Origin: Obrimoposthia wandeli
Lineage: Eukaryota
DNA: 64,000 nt
Reading direction: 5' to 3'
Assembly: GCA_977020255.1 (NCBI GenBank)
Contig: CDROCS010000410.1
Span: forward strand, 372,001-436,000
Part shown: one piece after another, positions 1 to 7,958 of the stretch
Layout: each line of letters opens with the position of its first letter
Position numbering within the stretch: the first letter of the stretch is position 1
Made by a program: the position numbers and the translations under genes
Notes under the pieces: model-generated
The model's input: only the letters and a program-made list of their open reading frames with translations
Database searches by the model: none
What the model was told of the DNA's origin: nothing

Positions 1-328
1 TCAAAAAATCTGACGGGCTTAATATTTGTCCTGCGACAAAATCATCCGCAGCCACGGTATTTTTTAATGTCGAGATTAAAAATGTGGCTTTATCAATAAA
101 ATCAACACGGGAACTAACATCCTGTTCATTTACCGTTTTCCAGGCAAATAACGAGGCACTATAAGGACGACCAATAGTGATATCCTGCGTGGTAACAAGT
201 ACTTCATAATTCTTAACCAGATCCTGTTTAGACGTGCTTTGCACTGGTGCTGATAAGCTGAAAAATAGCCAAATCAACCCAAGTAAAGACGTACAAACAG
301 ACAGATAAACTAAACGTTTTGCATGCAT
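1..328 (-). CDS. rcpC: Flp pilus assembly protein RcpC/CpaB, 5' part (runs off window start)
   Basis: Read by hand: ATG at 328 gives MHAKRLVYLSVCTSLLGLIWLFFSLSAPV...YEVLVTTQDITIG...VAADDFVAGQILSPSDFL, open to base 1. N-terminal TM segment then a SAF-like pattern; lies just downstream of flp. Not in the ORF track. Confidence 0.75.
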   Translation of the reverse strand, partial: MHAKRLVYLSVCTSLLGLIWLFFSLSAPVQSTSKQDLVKNYEVLVTTQDITIGRPYSASLFAWKTVNEQDVSSRVDFIDKATFLISTLKNTVAADDFVAGQILSPSDFL

Positions 329-383
329 AATTGTTACTTCTATTAATACGGCCGAAACCGTATTCTCTCTGAGTTAATGTTTA

Positions 384-563
384 TTATTTATCAGCTTTAA
401 CTGTATCCAGTTTCTCAATTACAGACTCATAGGTCTGCTCAATCGCATTCGAAAGCTTGCCGTCAGAACCAAAAAATTGCAGCATAATAAGTGACATAGC
501 AGCCGCTAAAATTGCATATTCAATTGCCGCAGCACCACGTTGTTTTTGTTTGTTGTTTTTCAT
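384..563 (-). CDS. flp: Flp/Fap type IVb pilin (59 aa)
   Basis: Read by hand: MKNNKQKQRG|AAAIEYAILAAAMSLIMLQFFGSDGKLSNAIEQTYESVIEKLDTVKADK*. Shows the prepilin G cleavage site, E+5/Y+6 Flp motif and hydrophobic helix. One residue under the 60-aa track cutoff. Confidence 0.92.
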   Translation of the reverse strand: MKNNKQKQRGAAAIEYAILAAAMSLIMLQFFGSDGKLSNAIEQTYESVIEKLDTVKADK

Positions 564-675
564 TTTTTATCTCTTTTATTTTTATGGTTAATCTTGCTGT
601 TATAATTAATCTTGTTTTTATGATTTCATTTGGCCGTTTCGTAATTACGAACTGCCAAATGAAAGTATCTATCTA

Positions 676-3600
676 TTATTCAGAAGCTGTTAAACGGTAG
701 GCATATTCCGATCTCCAACTTGGCACCACTTTATCAACATCAGATTTACCTTCAGTGCTCATGTTGTAACATTTCTGTCGACCAAATTGAGCAGTATCAG
801 CGCTCACATAACAAAGTGCAGAACCCGATTTTTCCATATTATTAAAACGGAACACGGTACTATCAACAGGACTTAAGCCCTGCAGTTCAGCCAAACTTGG
901 TACACGCCAATTAGTCTTGTTACACAAGCCTTCATTATTAATTCGTTCTACTTCAGCTAATACCGTATCAACTTCAGAACTTGAGTTACCATGATTTTTA
1001 ATTCGTATCGCAGTATCTGCAGTATCAAACAATTGCCATGTTTGTTTTGACTCAGGTTGATAAGCACATACAGCCGCATCAACATCTGTCGTCATACCTC
1101 CAGCACTATCCAGCAATTGATATGTCAATTTAATTTCACTTACTAAACGACTTAGTACGACTTTATCCTCATCACCCTGTTTTGATGCCGAGTTGCTCAT
1201 CGCTGAGTTATTTTTGGTTTTATAGTGGTAAATTTTTGCATTTTTATTAACATCGTCAGCAGTCCAGTACCAAAATAAGGTTCCGCCACCAGTATAATAA
1301 TCAATGTCATATTCAGGTTTAAGCGCAAGATGATTTAAGAAAACATCAACATCAATCGTCTTGCCACTATTAACCGAGGCTGTTTCCAATGTCTTTAACT
1401 GATTTTTTTTTGGTAATGACCAATCACTACGACCACAAAACTGTACGTTATTTATCAGTTCAATAAGACCACCAGCCCCCATCACACTTGCAATACCAGT
1501 ACCTGAAGCATCAAAGGCTAAATCATCAGCCCCTTTTGGCAGTCCATCTTTAAGTAACGTCCAAGTACGTTGGCGAACAGAATCACGATTATCCATCACA
1601 CAGCGCCAACCTTCTTCGTACGTTGTAGCGCTCGGTAAATTATCTCCATTAATGTCTAACTTGATAAAATAATTTCCGATAACAGCGTCTGTATCCGCGA
1701 TTTTATAACCTGCTGTTGACGCTTGTTTTAACCCAGTAACAGCATGTTCAATAAGGACATCTACATCTGCAATGCTAGGTAAGCTATTAAACATGATAAG
1801 TAGCTTATCAAGTGCCGAAATAAGCGCTGTATTCGTTGTGGTTGGTAATTCGTCACTTGCTGACGCCAAGGCTTGAATAAGGCTAATATTAGCGTTAATG
1901 AAATCACTGATTGCTGCTGTTGCAGCAAATAATGCTAAGCTCTTAGCGTGAATTTCAGCGCTATCTGTTGCTGCGATTAAGGCATCTTTGATGATATTTG
2001 CCGTGGTATTTTGATCCGTTAACTTAATTAGCGCAGTTAACGCGGGGGTCACCTTTAGTGCCGATTTGAATGAAGTGTGTAACGCCGTTAAATTAATAAA
2101 CGCCACTTTAATCGATGCGACATTGGTATTAACCGTTGTTTTAAGTGCATCATCAATACTGCTATCATTTTCGAGCATAGTTGAGTAAAGCACTAATAAA
2201 TCGATTTTATCCTGATATTCAGTTAATGCTAACGAGAGTAAATCAAACTCCGTTTTCGCTTTAGTCTCAACGGTTGTCACGTCAGACAATAATGGCGTCA
2301 AATGTTGACCCGCTAACGAGTCAATATTGTAGATAACTGTAATTAAATCAGTTGATGTTGTTTGCCAATGATTATTCTGCGATGACACTAGCGCTTTCAG
2401 TGCAGTATTCGTAGATGTAGCCTCTGTTAATATTTTCGTTGTATCAGGTAATGACCAGCTTAATATTACTTTCGCATTTTGATACGATTGAGTATTTTCT
2501 TGGCCTAATGTGATTTTTTTAAATGTTGTAATACCAGTGGCAACTTCTGAAGCCCAGTGCGCGTAATATCGTGAATTGCTAATTAAATAATCGTCGAAAG
2601 TATTTAATATATAACTTGAATCAATCTGAGTTTTCGCCTTCATGGCAGTCGTGTCTAACAGCTGCCAATTTGCTATATCACAAAACTTTGGTGTTAGCAG
2701 CGCAGTCACTGCTGCAGCTTGACTTGTAGAACCTGCATAACTCCAAAACTGCGGGCCTTCACCCTGTGCATCATATTCAATGTAACAACCCGTGTTAGAT
2801 GCTCTTACCCAATTGCCGTTGTATGTAAGAGCATTTGCTTGTTTCCAAGTAACCATTGGTACGATACGTGTTACATAAAAATCACTCGTTGCAGCTGTAG
2901 CATAAAGCGTCTGACCTGCAGGATTGACCTGATTCGCAATCGCGTTTTTCTTAACACGCACACCGACTTTATTTTTAACATAAGCTTTCGGACCAACATG
3001 TTGCGGTAGGCTCGTTACAGCCTGCCATGTTATGCCACCATCATTGGTTAATTCATAATGCTCAGGCTTATCATAATCAGTACCTGTATTTCTATTTGTC
3101 ACCCATGTCCAGCTAAAACCATTGGTTTTAACTTCATAAGGATAACCAGTGTTACCAATATTTTTGTTCACAATGACTGGCGCCGTCGGAGCAGCTATCA
3201 CAACTGGCGCCCCGGAAGTAAAGGCTTGTGTACTGATTAACGCAGTACCCGCTAACGTGCCAGTTGCAGCGTTAACTTTAACGCGCACTAGTACATGTCC
3301 AGTATCAATATTAACATCACCAACCAATAGCGGTTTGCTAGCAACAGTTGTCCAATCAACACCGCCAGTCAGTGAGTATTCATACTCGCTAACATCGTTA
3401 AAACCACTAACAAGAGCCCAATCAAAGGTATTCAAGCTGTCATTCTGAACTGGATTAGTAGGCGATTTAGGGCGTTTTATCGCTGAATCAGCGGTATAAA
3501 TAGATGTATTAACGAGTACGTCACTCGCAACTCGATTCTTGCTTGAGTCTGCCTTTACACGGATTTGAATATCGCCGACAGCATAAACACCATCGATAAC

Positions 3601-3870
3601 CAATTGATGAGGATTTCCATTCACTGCGGACCATGGCTGATTCGGTATTTTTATTTCATAAAATTGTTTATCACTAAAATTATGACTCCAAGACCAGCCA
3701 AACTGATCAAGGTCATCATTCACGATAGGTCCAATAGGAGCATCTGGTTTAACGATATTTTGCGTCGGATTTGTTGATTTTTGATCTGGGCTTGCTTCAT
3801 TACAACCCGTTAACAACGTACCTGTAACCACTGTCAACGCGAGCAGTGACTTGTTTACTCCTAACAACAT
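676..3870 (-). CDS. Large lipoprotein: 3 FnIII-like repeats, helical stalk, multiple Lcl/DUF1566-like domains
   Basis: Lipobox LLTG-C after MLLGVNK (start 3870, AAGGG upstream; track start 3939). C..D/W....N...(F/L)C...W.(L/V)P motifs: FCGRSDWSLP, LCNKTNWRVP, and a degenerate FCDIANWQLL. Confidence 0.8.
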   Translation of the reverse strand: MLLGVNKSLLALTVVTGTLLTGCNEASPDQKSTNPTQNIVKPDAPIGPIVNDDLDQFGWSWSHNFSDKQFYEIKIPNQPWSAVNGNPHQLVIDGVYAVGDIQIRVKADSSKNRVASDVLVNTSIYTADSAIKRPKSPTNPVQNDSLNTFDWALVSGFNDVSEYEYSLTGGVDWTTVASKPLLVGDVNIDTGHVLVRVKVNAATGTLAGTALISTQAFTSGAPVVIAAPTAPVIVNKNIGNTGYPYEVKTNGFSWTWVTNRNTGTDYDKPEHYELTNDGGITWQAVTSLPQHVGPKAYVKNKVGVRVKKNAIANQVNPAGQTLYATAATSDFYVTRIVPMVTWKQANALTYNGNWVRASNTGCYIEYDAQGEGPQFWSYAGSTSQAAAVTALLTPKFCDIANWQLLDTTAMKAKTQIDSSYILNTFDDYLISNSRYYAHWASEVATGITTFKKITLGQENTQSYQNAKVILSWSLPDTTKILTEATSTNTALKALVSSQNNHWQTTSTDLITVIYNIDSLAGQHLTPLLSDVTTVETKAKTEFDLLSLALTEYQDKIDLLVLYSTMLENDSSIDDALKTTVNTNVASIKVAFINLTALHTSFKSALKVTPALTALIKLTDQNTTANIIKDALIAATDSAEIHAKSLALFAATAAISDFINANISLIQALASASDELPTTTNTALISALDKLLIMFNSLPSIADVDVLIEHAVTGLKQASTAGYKIADTDAVIGNYFIKLDINGDNLPSATTYEEGWRCVMDNRDSVRQRTWTLLKDGLPKGADDLAFDASGTGIASVMGAGGLIELINNVQFCGRSDWSLPKKNQLKTLETASVNSGKTIDVDVFLNHLALKPEYDIDYYTGGGTLFWYWTADDVNKNAKIYHYKTKNNSAMSNSASKQGDEDKVVLSRLVSEIKLTYQLLDSAGGMTTDVDAAVCAYQPESKQTWQLFDTADTAIRIKNHGNSSSEVDTVLAEVERINNEGLCNKTNWRVPSLAELQGLSPVDSTVFRFNNMEKSGSALCYVSADTAQFGRQKCYNMSTEGKSDVDKVVPSWRSEYAYRLTASE

Positions 3871-4072
3871 TTTACCTATCCCTTTTATGTAATTATAAAT
3901 AACTTTATGAAAACTATAGTCAAACATAAATTTTCGCATATACTAACGGGAATGAGAGTGATTATCAATTGTATTTGATCATATATTTTACTAATCATCT
4001 TTATTTACATTAAAATGACTGGTTTCCAAACGGTACCCGGTATAAAACTTCAACCAACAAAGTGTTATCTAT

Positions 4073-6133
4073 ATGAATGGAAAATTTAAACTATCTAAAA
4101 TAGCGGTTATTCTAGCGGGGTGTAGTCTCGTAGTTAGCTGTGGCGGCGAAGAAAGCAGTACGACAAAATCGGATCTATATGACTACAGCAAGCAATCAAT
4201 CTGCGTAGACACAGATCGTAATTATGCTTGTGCAGCTGGTGAACAAAAAGTAGCAACGCTATGGAGTGTTGCTAGGGATAACACTGCGCCCTTTCTTATC
4301 GAGAGTGGGGGTTATGTACTTACTGCGCCAGCAAGTGCGAATGTAGTCAGTCCGTTTACGACATTGATTCAAAATGAAATTTTATTTAACCCACAATTTT
4401 CCGGTAGCGTTGCGCAAGTGCAAACACAAGCACAATCGTATTTACAGCAACTATTTGGGGATAAATATAATCTTGATTTTAATAGACTAAATACCGAACA
4501 CGGGCCAAAAGAAGCAACTAACTTGTTACTCGCCTCTTTTGAGTATGCGTTGTCATTGAAAGGGGATTCTAAAGCGCTGAAAATCTCTGCTGCTGTTGAT
4601 AAAATGGTGAGTACCAGTAATTTTGATATAACGGATACTTTACTGCAATCTGACTTAGATAATACCTATGTAAACTTAAATAAGCGCTATCTGATCCCTG
4701 GTTCTTATCCAATGCGCACGCTATCAAGTGGCAGTGCAATCACGATAAATGAAAATACCGGCATGCTACTTGCCCTTACCTATGACGATAAATTATTACA
4801 AATTGATACAACGACAGGATTAAGCAACACATTTACCCCGGCGACGACAACTCAAACAGCACCAATAATGAGTACATACGACGACCATGATGATGACGAC
4901 GACGACGACGATGATGATGATCACCATGGAGGTGACTGCGATGATGATTATGGGTCCCTTTTCGGGGATGACTGCAATGGTGGCGGTACTACCCAGCCAG
5001 CATCAAGAATTCTATCAGCCGCTCAAGGCGACCATAATAAAAATGCTTATTTGATTTATCAGCCGACGATTTATGGCGATAACAGCATGAGTTATACGTG
5101 CAATAGTACGGGTAACAATGGTATTTTCTTAACTGAACTAGGCAAGAACAGTCAAGCATCTCCTTTGTCTTCAGCACCAAAAATTAGTACTTATAGTCGT
5201 GCATCTGGCAGTACTAAACCCCCTGTCGTCGTGCCCGTATTACCTGTTTCATCTGCAAGTTGTAAAAACAACCATATCAGTGAGTTAGTCGTCTCTCTTA
5301 ACCACAATACTGTCGCAGCTGTATTTAGTAAGGGTTATAGACAAGGCGCTGAATTAAAACAACTATCTAGCAGTACTTTACAGCCCACAGGTAACAGTTA
5401 TGACCTATCTTCAGCGCAGGCAGAATTCATATTAAGCAAGCAACAAAAATCATTATTCGTGCGACAAGATGCTGGTACAGCTGCGGTTGTAATTAATGCT
5501 CAAACCTTGAATTTACAAAGTGAAATAATAAAAAATGACATAGATAAAGCCGCATTCGTCAATAATGATAAACAACTGATTGTCAGCGATAAATCGAATA
5601 CTCTAAACTGGATTAATATTGCGCAAGGTTCATCAATCGCAACATTAGCATTAGCTGAAAATGTCATTAAACTCACTTCCGATACGACGGGTAAATTGAG
5701 TGCAGCATTAACGAATGAAAATATATATCTAATTGATAATGAAACAAAATCAATTATCTATTCGCAAGCTTATAGCCAACGTAACGTGTACGGAATGAGC
5801 ATGCTCAGTAATCGTATTATCATTAGCCGTTCGGGCGCGATTGATTATATTCAATTTGATAATTTGACCGGTACGCCAATCAAGATGGCTAAGCAGATGC
5901 TATCTAAAGACTTACTCAAGAATTGGTCAAAAAAGTCTGGTGCCTCATTAACAAACATGACGCTTGCAGAGCTACTACGAGATATTGGCGAAGAAGATGT
6001 CATTAGCCAACAATTCAGTGATATTGACCTGCAATGGCGACCAGCAAGTGCCACCAATATTGAAGGCGTAAAAGAGGTTATTATAACGGGGAATTATCGC
6101 GGCCAACGCATTAGCGTATCTAAAATGCTATAA
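4073..6133 (+). CDS. Lipoprotein with poly-Asp/His tract and probable beta-propeller C-terminal half
   Basis: Lipobox LVVS-C; CVDTDRNYAC Cys pair; DDHD11HH tract; repeating short beta-strand pattern (e.g. YLIDNETKSII) in the C-terminal half. Confidence 0.7.
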   Translation: MNGKFKLSKIAVILAGCSLVVSCGGEESSTTKSDLYDYSKQSICVDTDRNYACAAGEQKVATLWSVARDNTAPFLIESGGYVLTAPASANVVSPFTTLIQNEILFNPQFSGSVAQVQTQAQSYLQQLFGDKYNLDFNRLNTEHGPKEATNLLLASFEYALSLKGDSKALKISAAVDKMVSTSNFDITDTLLQSDLDNTYVNLNKRYLIPGSYPMRTLSSGSAITINENTGMLLALTYDDKLLQIDTTTGLSNTFTPATTTQTAPIMSTYDDHDDDDDDDDDDDHHGGDCDDDYGSLFGDDCNGGGTTQPASRILSAAQGDHNKNAYLIYQPTIYGDNSMSYTCNSTGNNGIFLTELGKNSQASPLSSAPKISTYSRASGSTKPPVVVPVLPVSSASCKNNHISELVVSLNHNTVAAVFSKGYRQGAELKQLSSSTLQPTGNSYDLSSAQAEFILSKQQKSLFVRQDAGTAAVVINAQTLNLQSEIIKNDIDKAAFVNNDKQLIVSDKSNTLNWINIAQGSSIATLALAENVIKLTSDTTGKLSAALTNENIYLIDNETKSIIYSQAYSQRNVYGMSMLSNRIIISRSGAIDYIQFDNLTGTPIKMAKQMLSKDLLKNWSKKSGASLTNMTLAELLRDIGEEDVISQQFSDIDLQWRPASATNIEGVKEVIITGNYRGQRISVSKML

Positions 6134-6150: not shown

Positions 6151-6690
6151 TTAATTACTTGAATCCAGCACCAGTCCACTTAACATCACCGACAGGCGTT
6201 CAATTTTGATATTGGATAACTGTCGGTAATCAAAATACGGGCACACAACTAAACGGTTTTTGACATCAATTGCAAATTCATCGTCTATCCACACCAGATT
6301 AGCCTCTAGCTTACCCGATGAAAGTAACGCCTTTGCATAAGTACGTCCGCATATAATATGAATAGTCTGGGTATTGGCATTAAGTACTGGCGGGCTAAAC
6401 AACAAAGCTGTTGCACTACCCGTTTGCAGTAAATAACGATCACGGTACTGTTGCCAAGTCGGTGCTCGCTGTGCAAAGTCAAAATCGGTAGGGCTTAATG
6501 CATACAAGAGTTTGGCATAGACGTTAAATACTTTACGCCAGCCATTGCCACAGGCTTGACCGATAGCATTTACTTCACCACTGACGAGTGAATTAACGCT
6601 GCTTATATTTTGGTATTCCAACATATTCGGCGTATTTGCCAAATACACCGAAAATGTAAAGTTAGCACAACCAAGACCTTTGTTTTCCAT
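6151..6690 (-). CDS. Conserved hypothetical protein (DUF6942-like)
   Basis: CGNGWRKVFNVYAKL and CPYFDYRQLSN motifs recalled from a marine gammaproteobacterial family; ATG at 6690. Confidence 0.6.
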   Translation of the reverse strand: MENKGLGCANFTFSVYLANTPNMLEYQNISSVNSLVSGEVNAIGQACGNGWRKVFNVYAKLLYALSPTDFDFAQRAPTWQQYRDRYLLQTGSATALLFSPPVLNANTQTIHIICGRTYAKALLSSGKLEANLVWIDDEFAIDVKNRLVVCPYFDYRQLSNIKIERLSVMLSGLVLDSSN

Positions 6691-6773
6691 CAGCAAGTAC
6701 GCCTATATTTTATTACAAAGAGGCGTATTATACATCGCTATAAGTTCACTAACCAGTGACCCTACTCTGATGG

Positions 6774-7382
6774 TTATTTCAATAGACTGACTTTGATATC
6801 AGCTAATTCATTTATGAACGATTCGAAAACAGCATCCTTGGTATAGATAACATATAATTCACTGACAACTCTAGCCAAAGGTAAGTCCTCTAAGCTGTCC
6901 GTATAAAACCGTAACCAACTGAATTCCAAATCATTAATTTCCATGCAGTTAACCACTGCGACCTTTTTAGCTTCACCGAGAAGTTCTACATAATACCCAT
7001 CAGATAGATTAGAAAATAAAGCATAATCAAATTTATCAAGAAAGGGTAAGTATTTCCCATAGATTGCAGGCGCTGCTGACGCCATGATATTTATTCCTGG
7101 CTGAGCTAAATGCTTTAATACTTGTTTATTGATAAATAAGCATAAATATCTGGAAAAGATATATCCAGCGATGCTCCAGTATTTACTTTCCGATTGGATT
7201 ATTGTTAATCTTTTTTTAAATTCGAACCTACCTACAAGACCAGTACATCGATGATAATACAATCTTAAAATAGGTAGGAAAGTAAACAAATTAAAAGGTA
7301 ACAAAATAAGTGTAAATATCACCCAGTGTTTAAAAGAATTAACTCTGATTAAGGTTAAGTCGAGATCATAAATTGATACCAT
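6774..7382 (-). CDS. HAD-superfamily (IB-like) phosphatase
   Basis: Motif I YDLDLT at the N-terminus, motif II SAA, motif III K, motif IV YTDSLED; hydrophobic segment near the N-terminus. Confidence 0.8.
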   Translation of the reverse strand: MVSIYDLDLTLIRVNSFKHWVIFTLILLPFNLFTFLPILRLYYHRCTGLVGRFEFKKRLTIIQSESKYWSIAGYIFSRYLCLFINKQVLKHLAQPGINIMASAAPAIYGKYLPFLDKFDYALFSNLSDGYYVELLGEAKKVAVVNCMEINDLEFSWLRFYTDSLEDLPLARVVSELYVIYTKDAVFESFINELADIKVSLLK

Positions 7383-7958
7383 TTATCGTGCATCCAAAGC
7401 CCATGGACATCTTAATAGTATTTTGGAGTACAACGTAAAATCGGCGTTGTGAATAGGATTGGTAAAGGTTGTCGTTAATACCGCAGATTTCACATCACAG
7501 CTATCATTAATCTTTGAAATGAAATCAAACACGTCTAGCATCGTATTTCCACTATCGACAGCATCATCTACAATGAGCACTTTACAACCTGGTTTCTTTA
7601 AACAAGCTATATCACCAGAAATCAGTTTCACATCCGAAGCGCACCTTTTTACTTCGTTATTTTTAAACTTTCTCTCTTGATAATAAACTTCAATACTTCT
7701 TAATGAATTTAAGGAAAACAGGGGTAAGTATTTTAACAAATTAAGTATTTTCAATTTTTCTTTTTTCTTTGTGGCCGGTCTTTGTCTTTTTACAATTAAC
7801 TGATTAAAACTTGCGAATGAACTCTTAGCCTCAACGACATACTTACCGCCAGTAGCAACGCCAACAACGACGTCAGGGCGGAAATCCCGTAGTGCTAAAC
7901 TAGCTAAATTATCACACGTCTGTACAAAATCATCTCCGATTAATGTTAATACTTTCAT
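7383..7958 (-). CDS. Type I phosphoribosyltransferase family protein
   Basis: PRPP-binding loop VLIVDDAVDSGNT and VVGVATGG. Its stop codon directly abuts the HAD start. Confidence 0.85.
   Translation of the reverse strand: MKVLTLIGDDFVQTCDNLASLALRDFRPDVVVGVATGGKYVVEAKSSFASFNQLIVKRQRPATKKKEKLKILNLLKYLPLFSLNSLRSIEVYYQERKFKNNEVKRCASDVKLISGDIACLKKPGCKVLIVDDAVDSGNTMLDVFDFISKINDSCDVKSAVLTTTFTNPIHNADFTLYSKILLRCPWALDAR

What the first reader, a model, noticed from the sequence alone, without database searches (positions are those of the whole stretch)
676..3870. Giant multi-Lcl lipoprotein at the head of a Tad pilus locus
Seen: lipobox, three FnIII-like repeats, a degenerate Lcl-like domain (~2480-2800), an Ala/Leu/Thr-rich helical stalk (~1680-2460), then two more Lcl/DUF1566-like domains. 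It ends 112 nt upstream of flp on the same strand. Known: DUF1566/Lcl adopts a C-type-lectin-like fold used in adhesins and DGR targets; core Tad systems do not include such a protein. Inference: a membrane-anchored, stalked, multivalent lectin working with the Flp pilus in adhesion.
Basis: partly seen in the sequence, partly recalled or inferred. Interest (0 to 1): 0.78.

Follow-up and report, generated by a model that had tools for sequence, protein, structure and literature searches.

The report
Tad-pilus-linked giant lectin-like lipoprotein
A 1064-residue bacterial (Moritella) lipoprotein built from three fibronectin-like domains, a helical rod and three lectin-like domains turns out to be the invariable first gene of one subtype of Tad adhesion-pilus locus in many marine bacteria, so it is a real, unstudied and testable accessory of that pilus.

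Summary
Window 676-3870 (minus strand) encodes a 1064-aa lipoprotein: lipobox, disordered tether, three homologous FnIII-like Asp-box domains, a degenerate Lcl_C-like domain, a rod predicted as two spectrin-like three-helix bundles, and two Lcl_C (DUF1566) domains. The last models onto the Legionella Lcl C-terminal domain (Z 11.6). It ends 112 nt upstream of flp.

The contig is Moritella DNA inside a 1.35-Gb assembly. Relatives of 860-2500 aa occur in Moritella, Vibrio, Photobacterium, Shewanella, Marinobacterium and Pseudomonadales. All 25 loci examined place the gene directly upstream of flp-rcpC-rcpA-tadZABC, nearly always opposite a conserved beta-propeller lipoprotein. Only about 15% of tad-positive Vibrionaceae species carry the pair, so it marks a tad subtype.

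The gene is a mosaic. Against M. dasanensis its dS is 0.50, versus 0.02-0.18 for the adjacent tad genes.

Linkage to the pilus is strongly supported. Lectin activity, surface exposure and co-transcription remain untested, and a terminator-like hairpin separates the gene from flp in most lineages. No paper in the library searched links DUF1566 to Tad. The scan had already noted the sister locus on another contig of this genome (s1-234652).

The parts
676..3870 (-). Gene for the 1064-aa lipoprotein (stop codon 676-678)
   Evidence: ORF list and translation. Orthologues at 61-80% identity in Moritella.
3802..3870 (-). Signal peptide with lipobox L-T-G-C (aa 1-23). Cys23 is invariant.
   Evidence: The lipobox is conserved across the family. 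The +2 residue is Asn, not Asp.
3754..3801 (-). Disordered Asn/Ser/Pro/Gln/Thr tether (aa 24-39)
   Evidence: pLDDT below 50 for residues 1-39. Composition.
2863..3753 (-). Three homologous FnIII-like beta-sandwich repeats with an Asp-box motif: R1 3472-3753, R2 3193-3471, R3 2863-3192
   Evidence: hhalign 98.6% and 98.5%. Foldseek matches to tandem FnIII. CHB_HEX_C and BNR above cut-off in long orthologues.
2449..2862 (-). Domain X: degenerate Lcl_C-like (C-type-lectin-like) domain, aa 337-474, with Cys362/Cys397
   Evidence: Its order of secondary-structure elements in the model is like L1 and L2.
1681..2448 (-). Helical rod, aa 475-730, predicted as two consecutive spectrin-like three-helix bundles
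   Evidence: Helices 477-518, 525-567, 574-633, 637-674, 681-695 and 700-719. Plectin SR7-8 5j1g_B: Z 14.6, rmsd 4.0, 223 of 229 aligned.
1153..1680 (-). L1: Lcl_C (DUF1566) domain, aa 731-906, with Cys757/Cys812. It is the most conserved, family-specific domain.
   Evidence: Pfam E 1.4e-7. Alignment A5. hhalign to L2 90%.
679..1152 (-). L2: Lcl_C (DUF1566) domain, aa 907-1064, with four conserved Cys
   Evidence: Pfam E 4.8e-6. 8q4e_A Lcl-CTD Z 11.6. InvE 5n40 Z 8.3.
624..664 (-). Stable hairpin (11+5 bp) just after the stop codon, without a U tract
   Evidence: Minimum free energy -20.7 kcal/mol for the region, z -3.7. Analogous hairpins with different sequences occur in most orthologous loci, and some are canonical terminators.
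384..563 (-). flp, the Flp/Fap prepilin gene (59 aa, G|AAAIEYA)
   Evidence: PF04964 at 33.8 bits against a cut-off of 32.2.
1..328 (-). Start of cpaB/rcpC. The tad locus continues beyond the window edge: rcpA, cpaD, tadZ, tadA, tadB, tadC, tadD, tadE, tadF, tadG.
3871..4072 (.). Divergent promoter region shared with the partner gene. The predicted -35 TTGATA / -10 TAGTAT (3940-3968, minus strand) lies in an invariant block. A Fur-box-like 14/19 match is at 3948-3966.
   Evidence: 90% column identity across six Moritella lineages. 100% identical to M. dasanensis at 3801-4000. Fur-box scan.
4073..6133 (+). Divergent partner gene: a 686-aa lipoprotein with an N-terminal helical domain, a seven-bladed beta-propeller, and an invariant poly-Asp run in a disordered loop
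   Evidence: Conserved at this position in 17 of 18 loci. Found in 27 of 251 Vibrionaceae species, including all 22 with the giant gene. AF2 model and fold search.

Best explanation
What it is. The gene encodes an outer-membrane-anchored lipoprotein. Together with a divergently transcribed beta-propeller lipoprotein, it is a dedicated accessory of one evolutionary subtype of Tad (Flp) pilus locus in marine Gammaproteobacteria.

Shown:
- The domain chain is lipid anchor, flexible tether, three FnIII-like spacers, lectin-like domain X, a rod of two three-helix bundles, and two Lcl_C lectin-like domains.
- Each lectin-like domain has a conserved disulfide-type Cys pair.
- The gene holds a strictly conserved position as the first gene upstream of flp.
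- The number of spacer repeats varies from 1 to 14 between lineages.
- Divergence is fast and mosaic compared with the pilus machinery.

Inferred:
- The protein is sorted to the outer membrane, because there is no Asp at +2.
- It is displayed outwards.
- The lectin-like heads, projected on spacers and rod, bind a ligand, most likely a glycan. That ligand could be on a substrate, on a host or on neighbouring cells.
- Binding acts together with Flp pilus attachment and retraction to hold the cell at a surface.
- Allelic diversity is maintained by recombination, because the protein is exposed to varying ligands, phages or grazers.

Expression is probably from its own conserved promoter. Read-through into flp would be modulated by the hairpin or terminator that follows the gene.
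For: Architecture.

Synteny:
- 18 of 18 loci.
- 4 of 4 more distant members.
- 3 of 3 variant forms at the same position.

Co-occurrence:
- The partner is present in all 22 Vibrionaceae species that carry the L1 family. Each has one copy, a few kb away on the opposite strand.
- The five 'partner-only' species sampled so far carry a shorter R-repeat + Lcl_C variant there.
- The pair is found in only 27 of 251 Vibrionaceae species, against 181 with RcpC.
- It is found in 10 of 13 Moritellaceae genomes.

Co-divergence with TadA: Mantel rho 0.74, p 0.001. Mean pairwise identity is 0.41 for L1+L2 against 0.65 for TadA.

Hypervariability against M. dasanensis:
- Amino-acid identity is 80%, against 96.5-99.6% for seven tad genes.
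- dS is 0.50, with domain X at 1.38, against 0.02-0.18 for the tad genes.
- dN/dS is 0.26, against 0.06-0.17.
- Nucleotide identity swings from 64% to 100% along the gene.

Length argument. Long forms with up to 14 repeats of about 90 aa plus the rod are too long for the periplasm. This is an inference.

Precedent. The Lcl C-terminal domain is a C-type-lectin-like adhesin head that binds glycosaminoglycans (PMC11162425).

Tight spacing. Three lineages have only 6-17 nt between the gene and flp.
Against: - There is no experimental datum for any family member. All are annotated 'hypothetical' or 'DUF1566 domain-containing'.
- No surface-export route for a lipoprotein is evident in the locus.
- Conserved Cys pairs fit the periplasm as well as the surface.
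- A terminator-like hairpin between the gene and flp argues against simple operon coupling.
- Legionella Lcl-CTD acts as a trimer with basic surface residues. I tested neither oligomerisation nor the binding residues, and L1 and L2 carry net negative charge.
- The folds of X and L1 were not searched as single domains.
- Raised dS means recombination. It is not proof of positive selection.
Confidence: 0.55

Rival explanations
1. Periplasm-facing structural accessory of the Tad machine. The lipoprotein hangs from the inner leaflet of the outer membrane. Its lectin-like domains bind peptidoglycan or the secretin complex. With the propeller partner, it helps to assemble, anchor or gate this subtype of Tad apparatus.
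For: - It is a lipoprotein with no obvious surface-export gene nearby.
- It is the first gene of the locus, and its partner is obligatory.
- The partner's propeller resembles periplasmic propellers such as E. coli YncE (Z 20.2).
- A thiol-redox tail (TlpA...DsbD) in the same operon could serve the Cys-paired domains.
- Tad systems already use outer-membrane lipoproteins (TadD, RcpB/CpaD).
Against: - Repeat number varies from 1 to 14, and total length from 860 to 2500 aa.
- The gene diverges far faster than the machine and is mosaic.
- 85% of tad-positive Vibrionaceae species lack it.
- The domain types (FnIII-like spacers plus a lectin-like head) are those of surface adhesins.
Confidence: 0.2
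2. Pilus-directed or self-directed lectin. The heads bind the cell's own Flp fibres (possibly glycosylated) or its own exopolysaccharide. This would bundle pili or glue sister cells, acting as a strain-specific aggregation or kin-recognition factor rather than a substrate adhesin.
For: - The gene has strict adjacency to flp.
- Allelic mosaicism is typical of recognition loci.
- The multivalent heads sit on a rod.
Against: - Flp is nearly invariant between Moritella lineages (98% identity) while the lectin-like domains vary. That does not fit co-evolving partners.
- No glycosyltransferase lies next to flp in the window.
Confidence: 0.15
3. Functionally unrelated neighbour. It would be a glycan-binding lipoprotein for nutrient capture that merely travels with the tad island.
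For: - It has its own conserved promoter.
- A terminator-like hairpin precedes flp.
Against: - Adjacency and orientation are kept in 25 of 25 loci, down to 27% identity and across at least six genera with different flanks.
- Three lineages have only 6-17 nt of spacing.
- There is never a second copy elsewhere in the genomes searched.
Confidence: 0.05
4. Target of a diversity-generating retroelement, as many DUF1566/CLec proteins are.
For: - DUF1566 is a recurrent DGR target domain in the literature (papers listed).
- The gene is hypervariable.
Against: - No segment of the gene is repeated anywhere in the 64-kb window, so there is no template repeat.
- Variation is spread over the whole gene and includes synonymous sites. 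It is not focused on adenine-templated codons in the last domain.
- L2 is the least variable part against M. dasanensis.
Confidence: 0.02

Closest known systems
Legionella pneumophila collagen-like protein Lcl (PDB 8q4e; PMC11162425)
   Same: - It shares the C-terminal DUF1566/Lcl_C domain with a C-type-lectin-like fold. L2 superposes at Z 11.6, rmsd 2.9 A, over 113 residues.
- The head is held away from the cell on an elongated stalk.
- It has an adhesin role.
   Different: - Lcl is a T2SS-secreted trimer. It has an amphipathic N-helix, a collagen triple helix and one head without disulfides.
- The Moritella protein is a lipoprotein. It has FnIII-like spacers, a spectrin-like helical rod, three lectin-like domains with Cys pairs, and tad linkage.
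- Sequence identity is only about 12%.
- Trimerisation and GAG-binding residues were not tested.
Invasin/intimin family adhesins (e.g. Yersinia InvE, PDB 5n40)
   Same: Both have a chain of Ig/FnIII-like spacer domains ending in a C-type-lectin-like binding domain. L2 matches the InvE domain at Z 8.3, rmsd 2.6, 96 aligned, 21% identity.
   Different: - Invasins are anchored by an N-terminal beta-barrel and LysM, not a lipid.
- They have no helical rod.
- They have a single head.
- They are not linked to pilus loci.
Canonical Tad/Flp loci (Aggregatibacter flp-tadV-rcpCAB-tadZABCDEFG; Caulobacter pilA-cpaA-F)
   Same: The downstream genes here are a complete tad set: flp, cpaB/rcpC, rcpA, cpaD, tadZ, tadA, tadB, tadC, tadD, tadE, tadF, tadG.
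   Different: - Canonical loci start with the pilin gene and have no giant lipoprotein or propeller lipoprotein.
- The pair is present in only about 15% of tad-positive Vibrionaceae species sampled.
- The Moritella locus lacks tadV and carries a TlpA-DUF4266-DUF3570-ApbE-DsbD tail.
PilY1 / TadG-type pilus-associated adhesins
   Same: These are large accessory proteins encoded with a type IV-like pilus and thought to mediate attachment. PilY1 has a beta-propeller, as the partner protein does.
   Different: - There is no sequence or family match to PilY1 (Pfam).
- PilY1 is pilus-tip associated through minor pilins, not lipid-anchored.
- A VWA-domain TadG is already present in this locus.
Leptospira DUF1566 lipoproteins (e.g. 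LIC_10499)
   Same: They are exported or outer-membrane proteins with a DUF1566 domain, studied as host-binding adhesins (PMC12723034).
   Different: - They are small, single-domain proteins with no repeats or rod and no pilus linkage.
- Homology is limited to the domain.

Membership tests
Pfam PF07603 Lcl_C (DUF1566) | Whole-protein score above the curated gathering cut-off | tested here: met
   46.6 bits against a cut-off of 34.9, in two stretches. Singly the domains score 32.2 and 27.3 bits, each below the cut-off.
Pfam PF07603 Lcl_C (DUF1566) | C-type-lectin-like fold like the solved Lcl C-terminal domain | tested here: met
   For L2: 8q4e_A at Z 11.6, rmsd 2.9, 113 aligned. L1 and X could not be searched as single domains. 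They are linked to L2 by hhalign at 90% and 84.6%.
Lcl (Legionella collagen-like adhesin) orthologue | Collagen-like GXY repeat region and N-terminal amphipathic helix | tested here: not met
   There is no collagen repeat. The N-terminus is a lipoprotein signal, followed by FnIII-like domains. The protein shares the domain only and is not an Lcl orthologue.
Lcl (Legionella collagen-like adhesin) orthologue | Trimeric head with a basic GAG-binding surface | not tested
   Only a monomer was modelled. L1 and L2 carry net charges of -4 and -5.
Bacterial lipoprotein (Lgt/LspA substrates) | Signal peptide ending in a lipobox [LVI][ASTG][GA]C | tested here: met
   LLTG|C at aa 19-23. Cys23 is invariant in 16 sequences. 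A lipobox is present across the genera examined. Acylation itself cannot be tested here.
Fibronectin type III (PF00041) | Sequence match to the fn3 profile | tested here: not met
   There is no fn3 hit even at E 10. The fold does match tandem FnIII structures (Foldseek prob 0.97-1.0), so the domains are FnIII-like by fold only.
CHB_HEX_C (PF03174) / BNR Asp-box (PF02012) repeats | Score above the gathering cut-off | tested here: inconclusive
   The window protein scores 12.7 and 11.1 bits, below the cut-offs. Long orthologues with the same repeat score 38-108 bits and 29-61 bits, above the cut-offs. The matches cover only the Asp-box hairpin.
Spectrin repeat | Three-helix bundle units joined by a continuous helix | tested here: inconclusive
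   Plectin SR7-8: Z 14.6, rmsd 4.0, 223 of 229 aligned. The tool warns that helical bundles reach Z of about 13-14 by arrangement alone. There is no sequence match.
Core Tad component (Flp, TadV, RcpCAB, TadZ-G) | Membership of one of the Tad Pfam/NCBIfam families | tested here: not met
   No Tad family is hit. The protein was not found in most tad-positive Vibrionaceae species sampled.
DGR variable protein | Template repeat and reverse transcriptase nearby; adenine-focused variation in the C-terminal CLec domain | tested here: not met
   No repeat of any part of the gene occurs in the 64-kb window. Variation is lowest in L2.

The most novel reading that the evidence does not exclude
The giant lipoprotein and its beta-propeller partner form a surface module that the Tad machine itself puts in place. 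The lipoprotein would be exported through the RcpA secretin, as T2SS exports lipoproteins such as pullulanase or MtrC. It would then work as the fixed 'landing gear' onto which a retracting Flp pilus pulls the cell. The conserved hairpin or terminator before flp would set the ratio of receptor to pilin. That would make this a Tad subtype with a dedicated cargo or adhesin, a function not known for Tad systems. In long forms, the N-terminal module shared between the giant protein and the partner would be the docking or export signal.
Probability: 0.12. Interest if true: 0.8.

Novelty: new variant of a known kind. Interest (0 to 1): 0.56.

Why it matters
Tad pili drive attachment, biofilm formation and host colonisation in many bacteria. 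What actually contacts the surface, and how loci diversify, is still poorly known.

This work defines a Tad subtype that always carries two extra lipoproteins: a modular, lectin-headed, rapidly recombining one, and a beta-propeller one. The subtype occurs in cultivable, genetically tractable marine genera (Vibrio, Photobacterium, Shewanella) as well as in psychrophilic Moritella.

That gives a concrete, testable candidate for the specificity determinant of these pili. It also gives DUF1566/Lcl_C domains a second genomic context beyond Legionella Lcl and DGR targets. Finally, it provides an easy marker for classifying tad loci.

If the protein is instead periplasmic, it would point to an unrecognised structural elaboration of the Tad machine.

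Tried and rejected
Both jobs were then spent, one on the full-length protein and one on the partner. X and L1 could therefore not be folded and searched as single domains.
- The full-model searches are dominated by FnIII (Foldseek) and by the helical rod (VIA).
- Sequence searches of the PDB with profiles of the whole family, of L1 and of X gave nothing meaningful.
- The ESM Atlas could not read the window's sequence. With the M. dasanensis orthologue it gave only sub-0.9 leads to Ig/fn3 + Lcl_C proteins.
- The DGR-target idea was rejected.
- A longer ORF starting at 3939 was rejected. The extra 23 codons lie in a leader that is invariant at all codon positions, and they lack a ribosome-binding site.
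- The Fur-box idea, taken from an earlier scan note, was only partly checked. A 14/19 match at 3948-3966 lies in the invariant promoter block, but 14 such matches occur in the window.
- Literature searches joining DUF1566, Lcl or BNR with Tad, Flp or Vibrio found no description of this linkage.
- The Aliivibrio salmonicida tad papers start the operon at flp and do not mention such a gene.
Full report
**Where the window comes from**

The window is G000:C410:372001-436000. G000 has 1.35 Gb in 6912 contigs, the size of a eukaryotic assembly, but the contig is bacterial. The best protein matches are all Moritella. Neighbouring genes are 91-96% identical at the nucleotide level to M. dasanensis ArB 0140.

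A second, different Moritella is present in the same assembly. Contig C3952 carries the orthologous locus, with the giant protein at 71% amino-acid identity.

**The observation**

The ORF 676..3939 lies on the minus strand. The probable start is the ATG at 3870, which has a ribosome-binding site. The 23 upstream in-frame codons lie in a leader that is invariant at every position among six Moritella lineages. That fits a regulatory region better than coding sequence.

The 1064-aa product starts with a signal peptide ending in LLTG|C. Cys23 is invariant, and a lipobox is kept in relatives from other genera. flp (384-563, minus strand, PF04964 above cut-off) follows after 112 nt, then cpaB.

Reading the contig leftwards gives a complete tad set: rcpA secretin, cpaD, tadZ, tadA, tadB, tadC, TPR tadD, tadE, tadF and VWA tadG. 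A TlpA-DUF4266-DUF3570-ApbE-DsbD tail follows. There is no tadV.

**Domain anatomy**

- **Pfam.** Only Lcl_C is found: 46.6 bits against a cut-off of 34.9, as two C-terminal copies with E 1.4e-7 and 4.8e-6.
- **N-terminal repeats.** Profile comparison of slices of the family alignment shows three homologous repeats: R1-R2 at 98.6%, R2-R3 at 98.5%. L1 and L2 are related at 90%.
- **Domain X (aa 337-474).** It has no Pfam hit of its own. Two of seven orthologous X domains hit Lcl_C at 8e-5. With diverse alignments, X matches L2 at 84.6% (E 6.8e-6) and L1 at 78%. It carries the same Cys pair and the C(G)xxxW-x-L-P/L motif, with Pro replaced by Leu in Moritella.
- **Cys pairs.** X, L1 and L2 each have conserved Cys pairs: 362/397, 757/812, and 935/983 plus 1020/1034.

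**Structure model**

An AlphaFold2 model built on 39 sequences has mean pLDDT 85.6 and pTM 0.60. Residues 1-39 are disordered.

- **Repeats.** Foldseek matches the N-terminal repeats to tandem FnIII structures, such as insulin receptor, titin and cytokine receptors (prob 0.97-1.0). Pfam fn3 is not matched. In long orthologues the repeats pass the cut-offs of CHB_HEX_C and the BNR Asp-box. They are therefore FnIII-like Asp-box beta-sandwiches.
- **Stalk.** It is six helices: 477-518, 525-567, 574-633, 637-674, 681-695 and 700-719. It superposes on tandem spectrin repeats, best on plectin SR7-8 (Z 14.6, rmsd 4.0, 223 of 229 aligned). That is a rod of two three-helix bundles, not one coiled coil. 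The Z value is at the level that helical bundles can reach by arrangement alone, so this is an architectural similarity only.
- **L2.** It superposes on the solved Legionella Lcl C-terminal domain (8q4e_A; Z 11.6, rmsd 2.9, 113 aligned). It also matches the lectin-like head of Yersinia InvE (Z 8.3).
- **Refutation criterion.** X and L1 could not be searched alone.

**Relatives**

The word-based search found full-length relatives only in Moritella, plus one 1508-aa protein. The exhaustive profile search found 541 proteins. Among them are core-sharing proteins of 1500-2500 aa from Vibrio, Photobacterium, Shewanella violacea and a Pseudomonadales MAG. They are named only 'DUF1566 domain-containing', 'BNR repeat protein' or hypothetical.

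Their architecture is lipobox, an N-module of about 260 aa, 5-14 R repeats, R3, X, rod, L1 and L2. Moritella has the short form: no N-module and three repeats. The N-module of the long forms is homologous to the N-terminus of the divergent partner lipoprotein (hhalign 98.3%, E 1.8e-14).

**Synteny**

Every locus examined has the gene directly upstream of flp on the same strand, followed by rcpC-rcpA-cpaD-tadZ-tadA-tadB. The 25 loci break down as follows:

- 5 loci from protein look-ups.
- 13 species-representative genomes.
- 4 more distant members.
- 3 variant forms.

Flanking genes differ between genera, except for one. A lipoprotein of about 670-770 aa on the opposite strand (window 4073-6133) is present in 17 of 18 loci and in 3 of 4 distant ones.

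In a sample of 251 Vibrionaceae species:

- 22 have the L1 family, one copy each.
- 27 have the partner, including all 22.
- The two 'partner-only' species I opened, out of five, carry at the same place an 896-aa variant: N-module, five repeats and one Lcl_C domain.
- RcpC, a tad marker, is found in 181 of the 251.

The pair therefore marks a minority tad subtype. Ten of 13 Moritellaceae genomes have it. Divergence of L1+L2 tracks that of TadA (Mantel rho 0.74, p 0.001) but is faster, with mean identity 0.41 against 0.65.

**Evolutionary behaviour**

Compared with M. dasanensis:

- The seven tad genes are 96.5-99.6% identical in protein, with dS 0.02-0.18.
- The giant gene is 80% identical, with dS 0.50 and dN/dS 0.26.
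- The partner is 87% identical, with dS 0.64.

Within the gene, nucleotide identity runs from 64-67% (X and part of the rod) to 97-100% (L2, the signal peptide and the promoter). Because synonymous sites are affected too, the signature is recombinational mosaicism between divergent alleles, not simply positive selection. Together with the variable repeat number, this is what one expects of an exposed, ligand-facing protein. It is an inference.

**Expression signals**

The divergent intergenic region (3871-4072) is 90% conserved across six Moritella lineages whose giant proteins are only 61-80% identical. A -35 TTGATA / -10 TAGTAT pair lies in an invariant block. A 14/19 Fur-box-like match overlaps it, but that score is not rare in the window.

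Downstream of the stop codon is a stable hairpin (window 624-664; region MFE -20.7 kcal/mol, z -3.7). Hairpins with unrelated sequences occupy the same place in most orthologous loci. Several are canonical intrinsic terminators with U tracts, and only 20-60 nt then remain before flp. Three lineages have just 6-17 nt between the genes.

Co-transcription is thus plausible, but it is probably modulated.

**The partner**

The partner models (pLDDT 77, pTM 0.74) as a helical N-domain plus a seven-bladed beta-propeller. The propeller scores Z 20-22 against WD40-type propellers and Z 20.2 against E. coli YncE. An invariant poly-Asp run sits in a disordered loop. This fold is generic and does not assign a function.

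**Interpretation**

Shown:
- The architecture.
- The lectin-like fold of L2.
- Family membership in Lcl_C.
- The strict and ancient linkage to one tad subtype.
- The obligatory partner.
- The mosaic hypervariability.

Inferred:
- Outer-membrane sorting, from the absence of Asp at +2 (the E. coli Lol rule).
- Outward display. Long forms with up to 14 repeats plus the rod would not fit the periplasm.
- Ligand binding by the lectin-like heads. This rests on analogy with Lcl, which binds glycosaminoglycans (PMC11162425), and with invasin-type heads.
- Cooperation with Flp pili in attachment.

The main rival is a periplasm-facing structural accessory. The DGR reading is rejected.

No paper in the searchable library connects DUF1566/Lcl_C with Tad or Flp.

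Noticed in passing
window 4073-6133 (+): A divergent 686-aa lipoprotein is conserved with the giant gene in nearly all loci. It is predicted as a helical N-domain plus a seven-bladed beta-propeller, with an invariant poly-Asp run in a disordered loop. Its N-terminal ~150 aa are homologous to the N-module of the long-form giant proteins in other genera.
   Followed up: yes
G000 contigs C410 and C3952 (L004): The 1.35-Gb assembly holds at least two different Moritella genomes. The same locus occurs on C3952 with tad proteins 94-99% identical, but the giant protein is only 71% identical.
   Followed up: partly
L003:3146-8307 (G000:C410, left of the window): The tad operon runs on into TlpA-like thioredoxin, DUF4266, DUF3570, ApbE and DsbD genes. 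In a metagenome relative (L030), an ApbE gene instead sits directly upstream of the giant gene.
   Followed up: partly
window 3948-3966: A Fur-box-like sequence (14 of 19 matches) overlaps the predicted -35/-10 of the giant gene, in a block invariant across Moritella. Fourteen matches of that quality exist in the window, so this is weak evidence.
   Followed up: partly
window 330-384 and L005: The Moritella tad locus has no tadV prepilin peptidase between flp and cpaB, unlike the related loci L030 and L032. A small hairpin follows the flp stop codon.
   Followed up: no
window 6151-6696 (-), 6774-7958 (-): The neighbours beyond the partner are a DUF6942 protein, an unassigned 202-aa protein and a phosphoribosyltransferase-domain protein. 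This stretch is also unusually variable against M. dasanensis (73-97% nucleotide identity).
   Followed up: no
G258 and G264 (Moritellaceae genomes): Two Moritella genomes show the L1 domain in open frames of only 693 and 394 aa. These may be truncated or broken copies of the gene, or contig ends.
   Followed up: no
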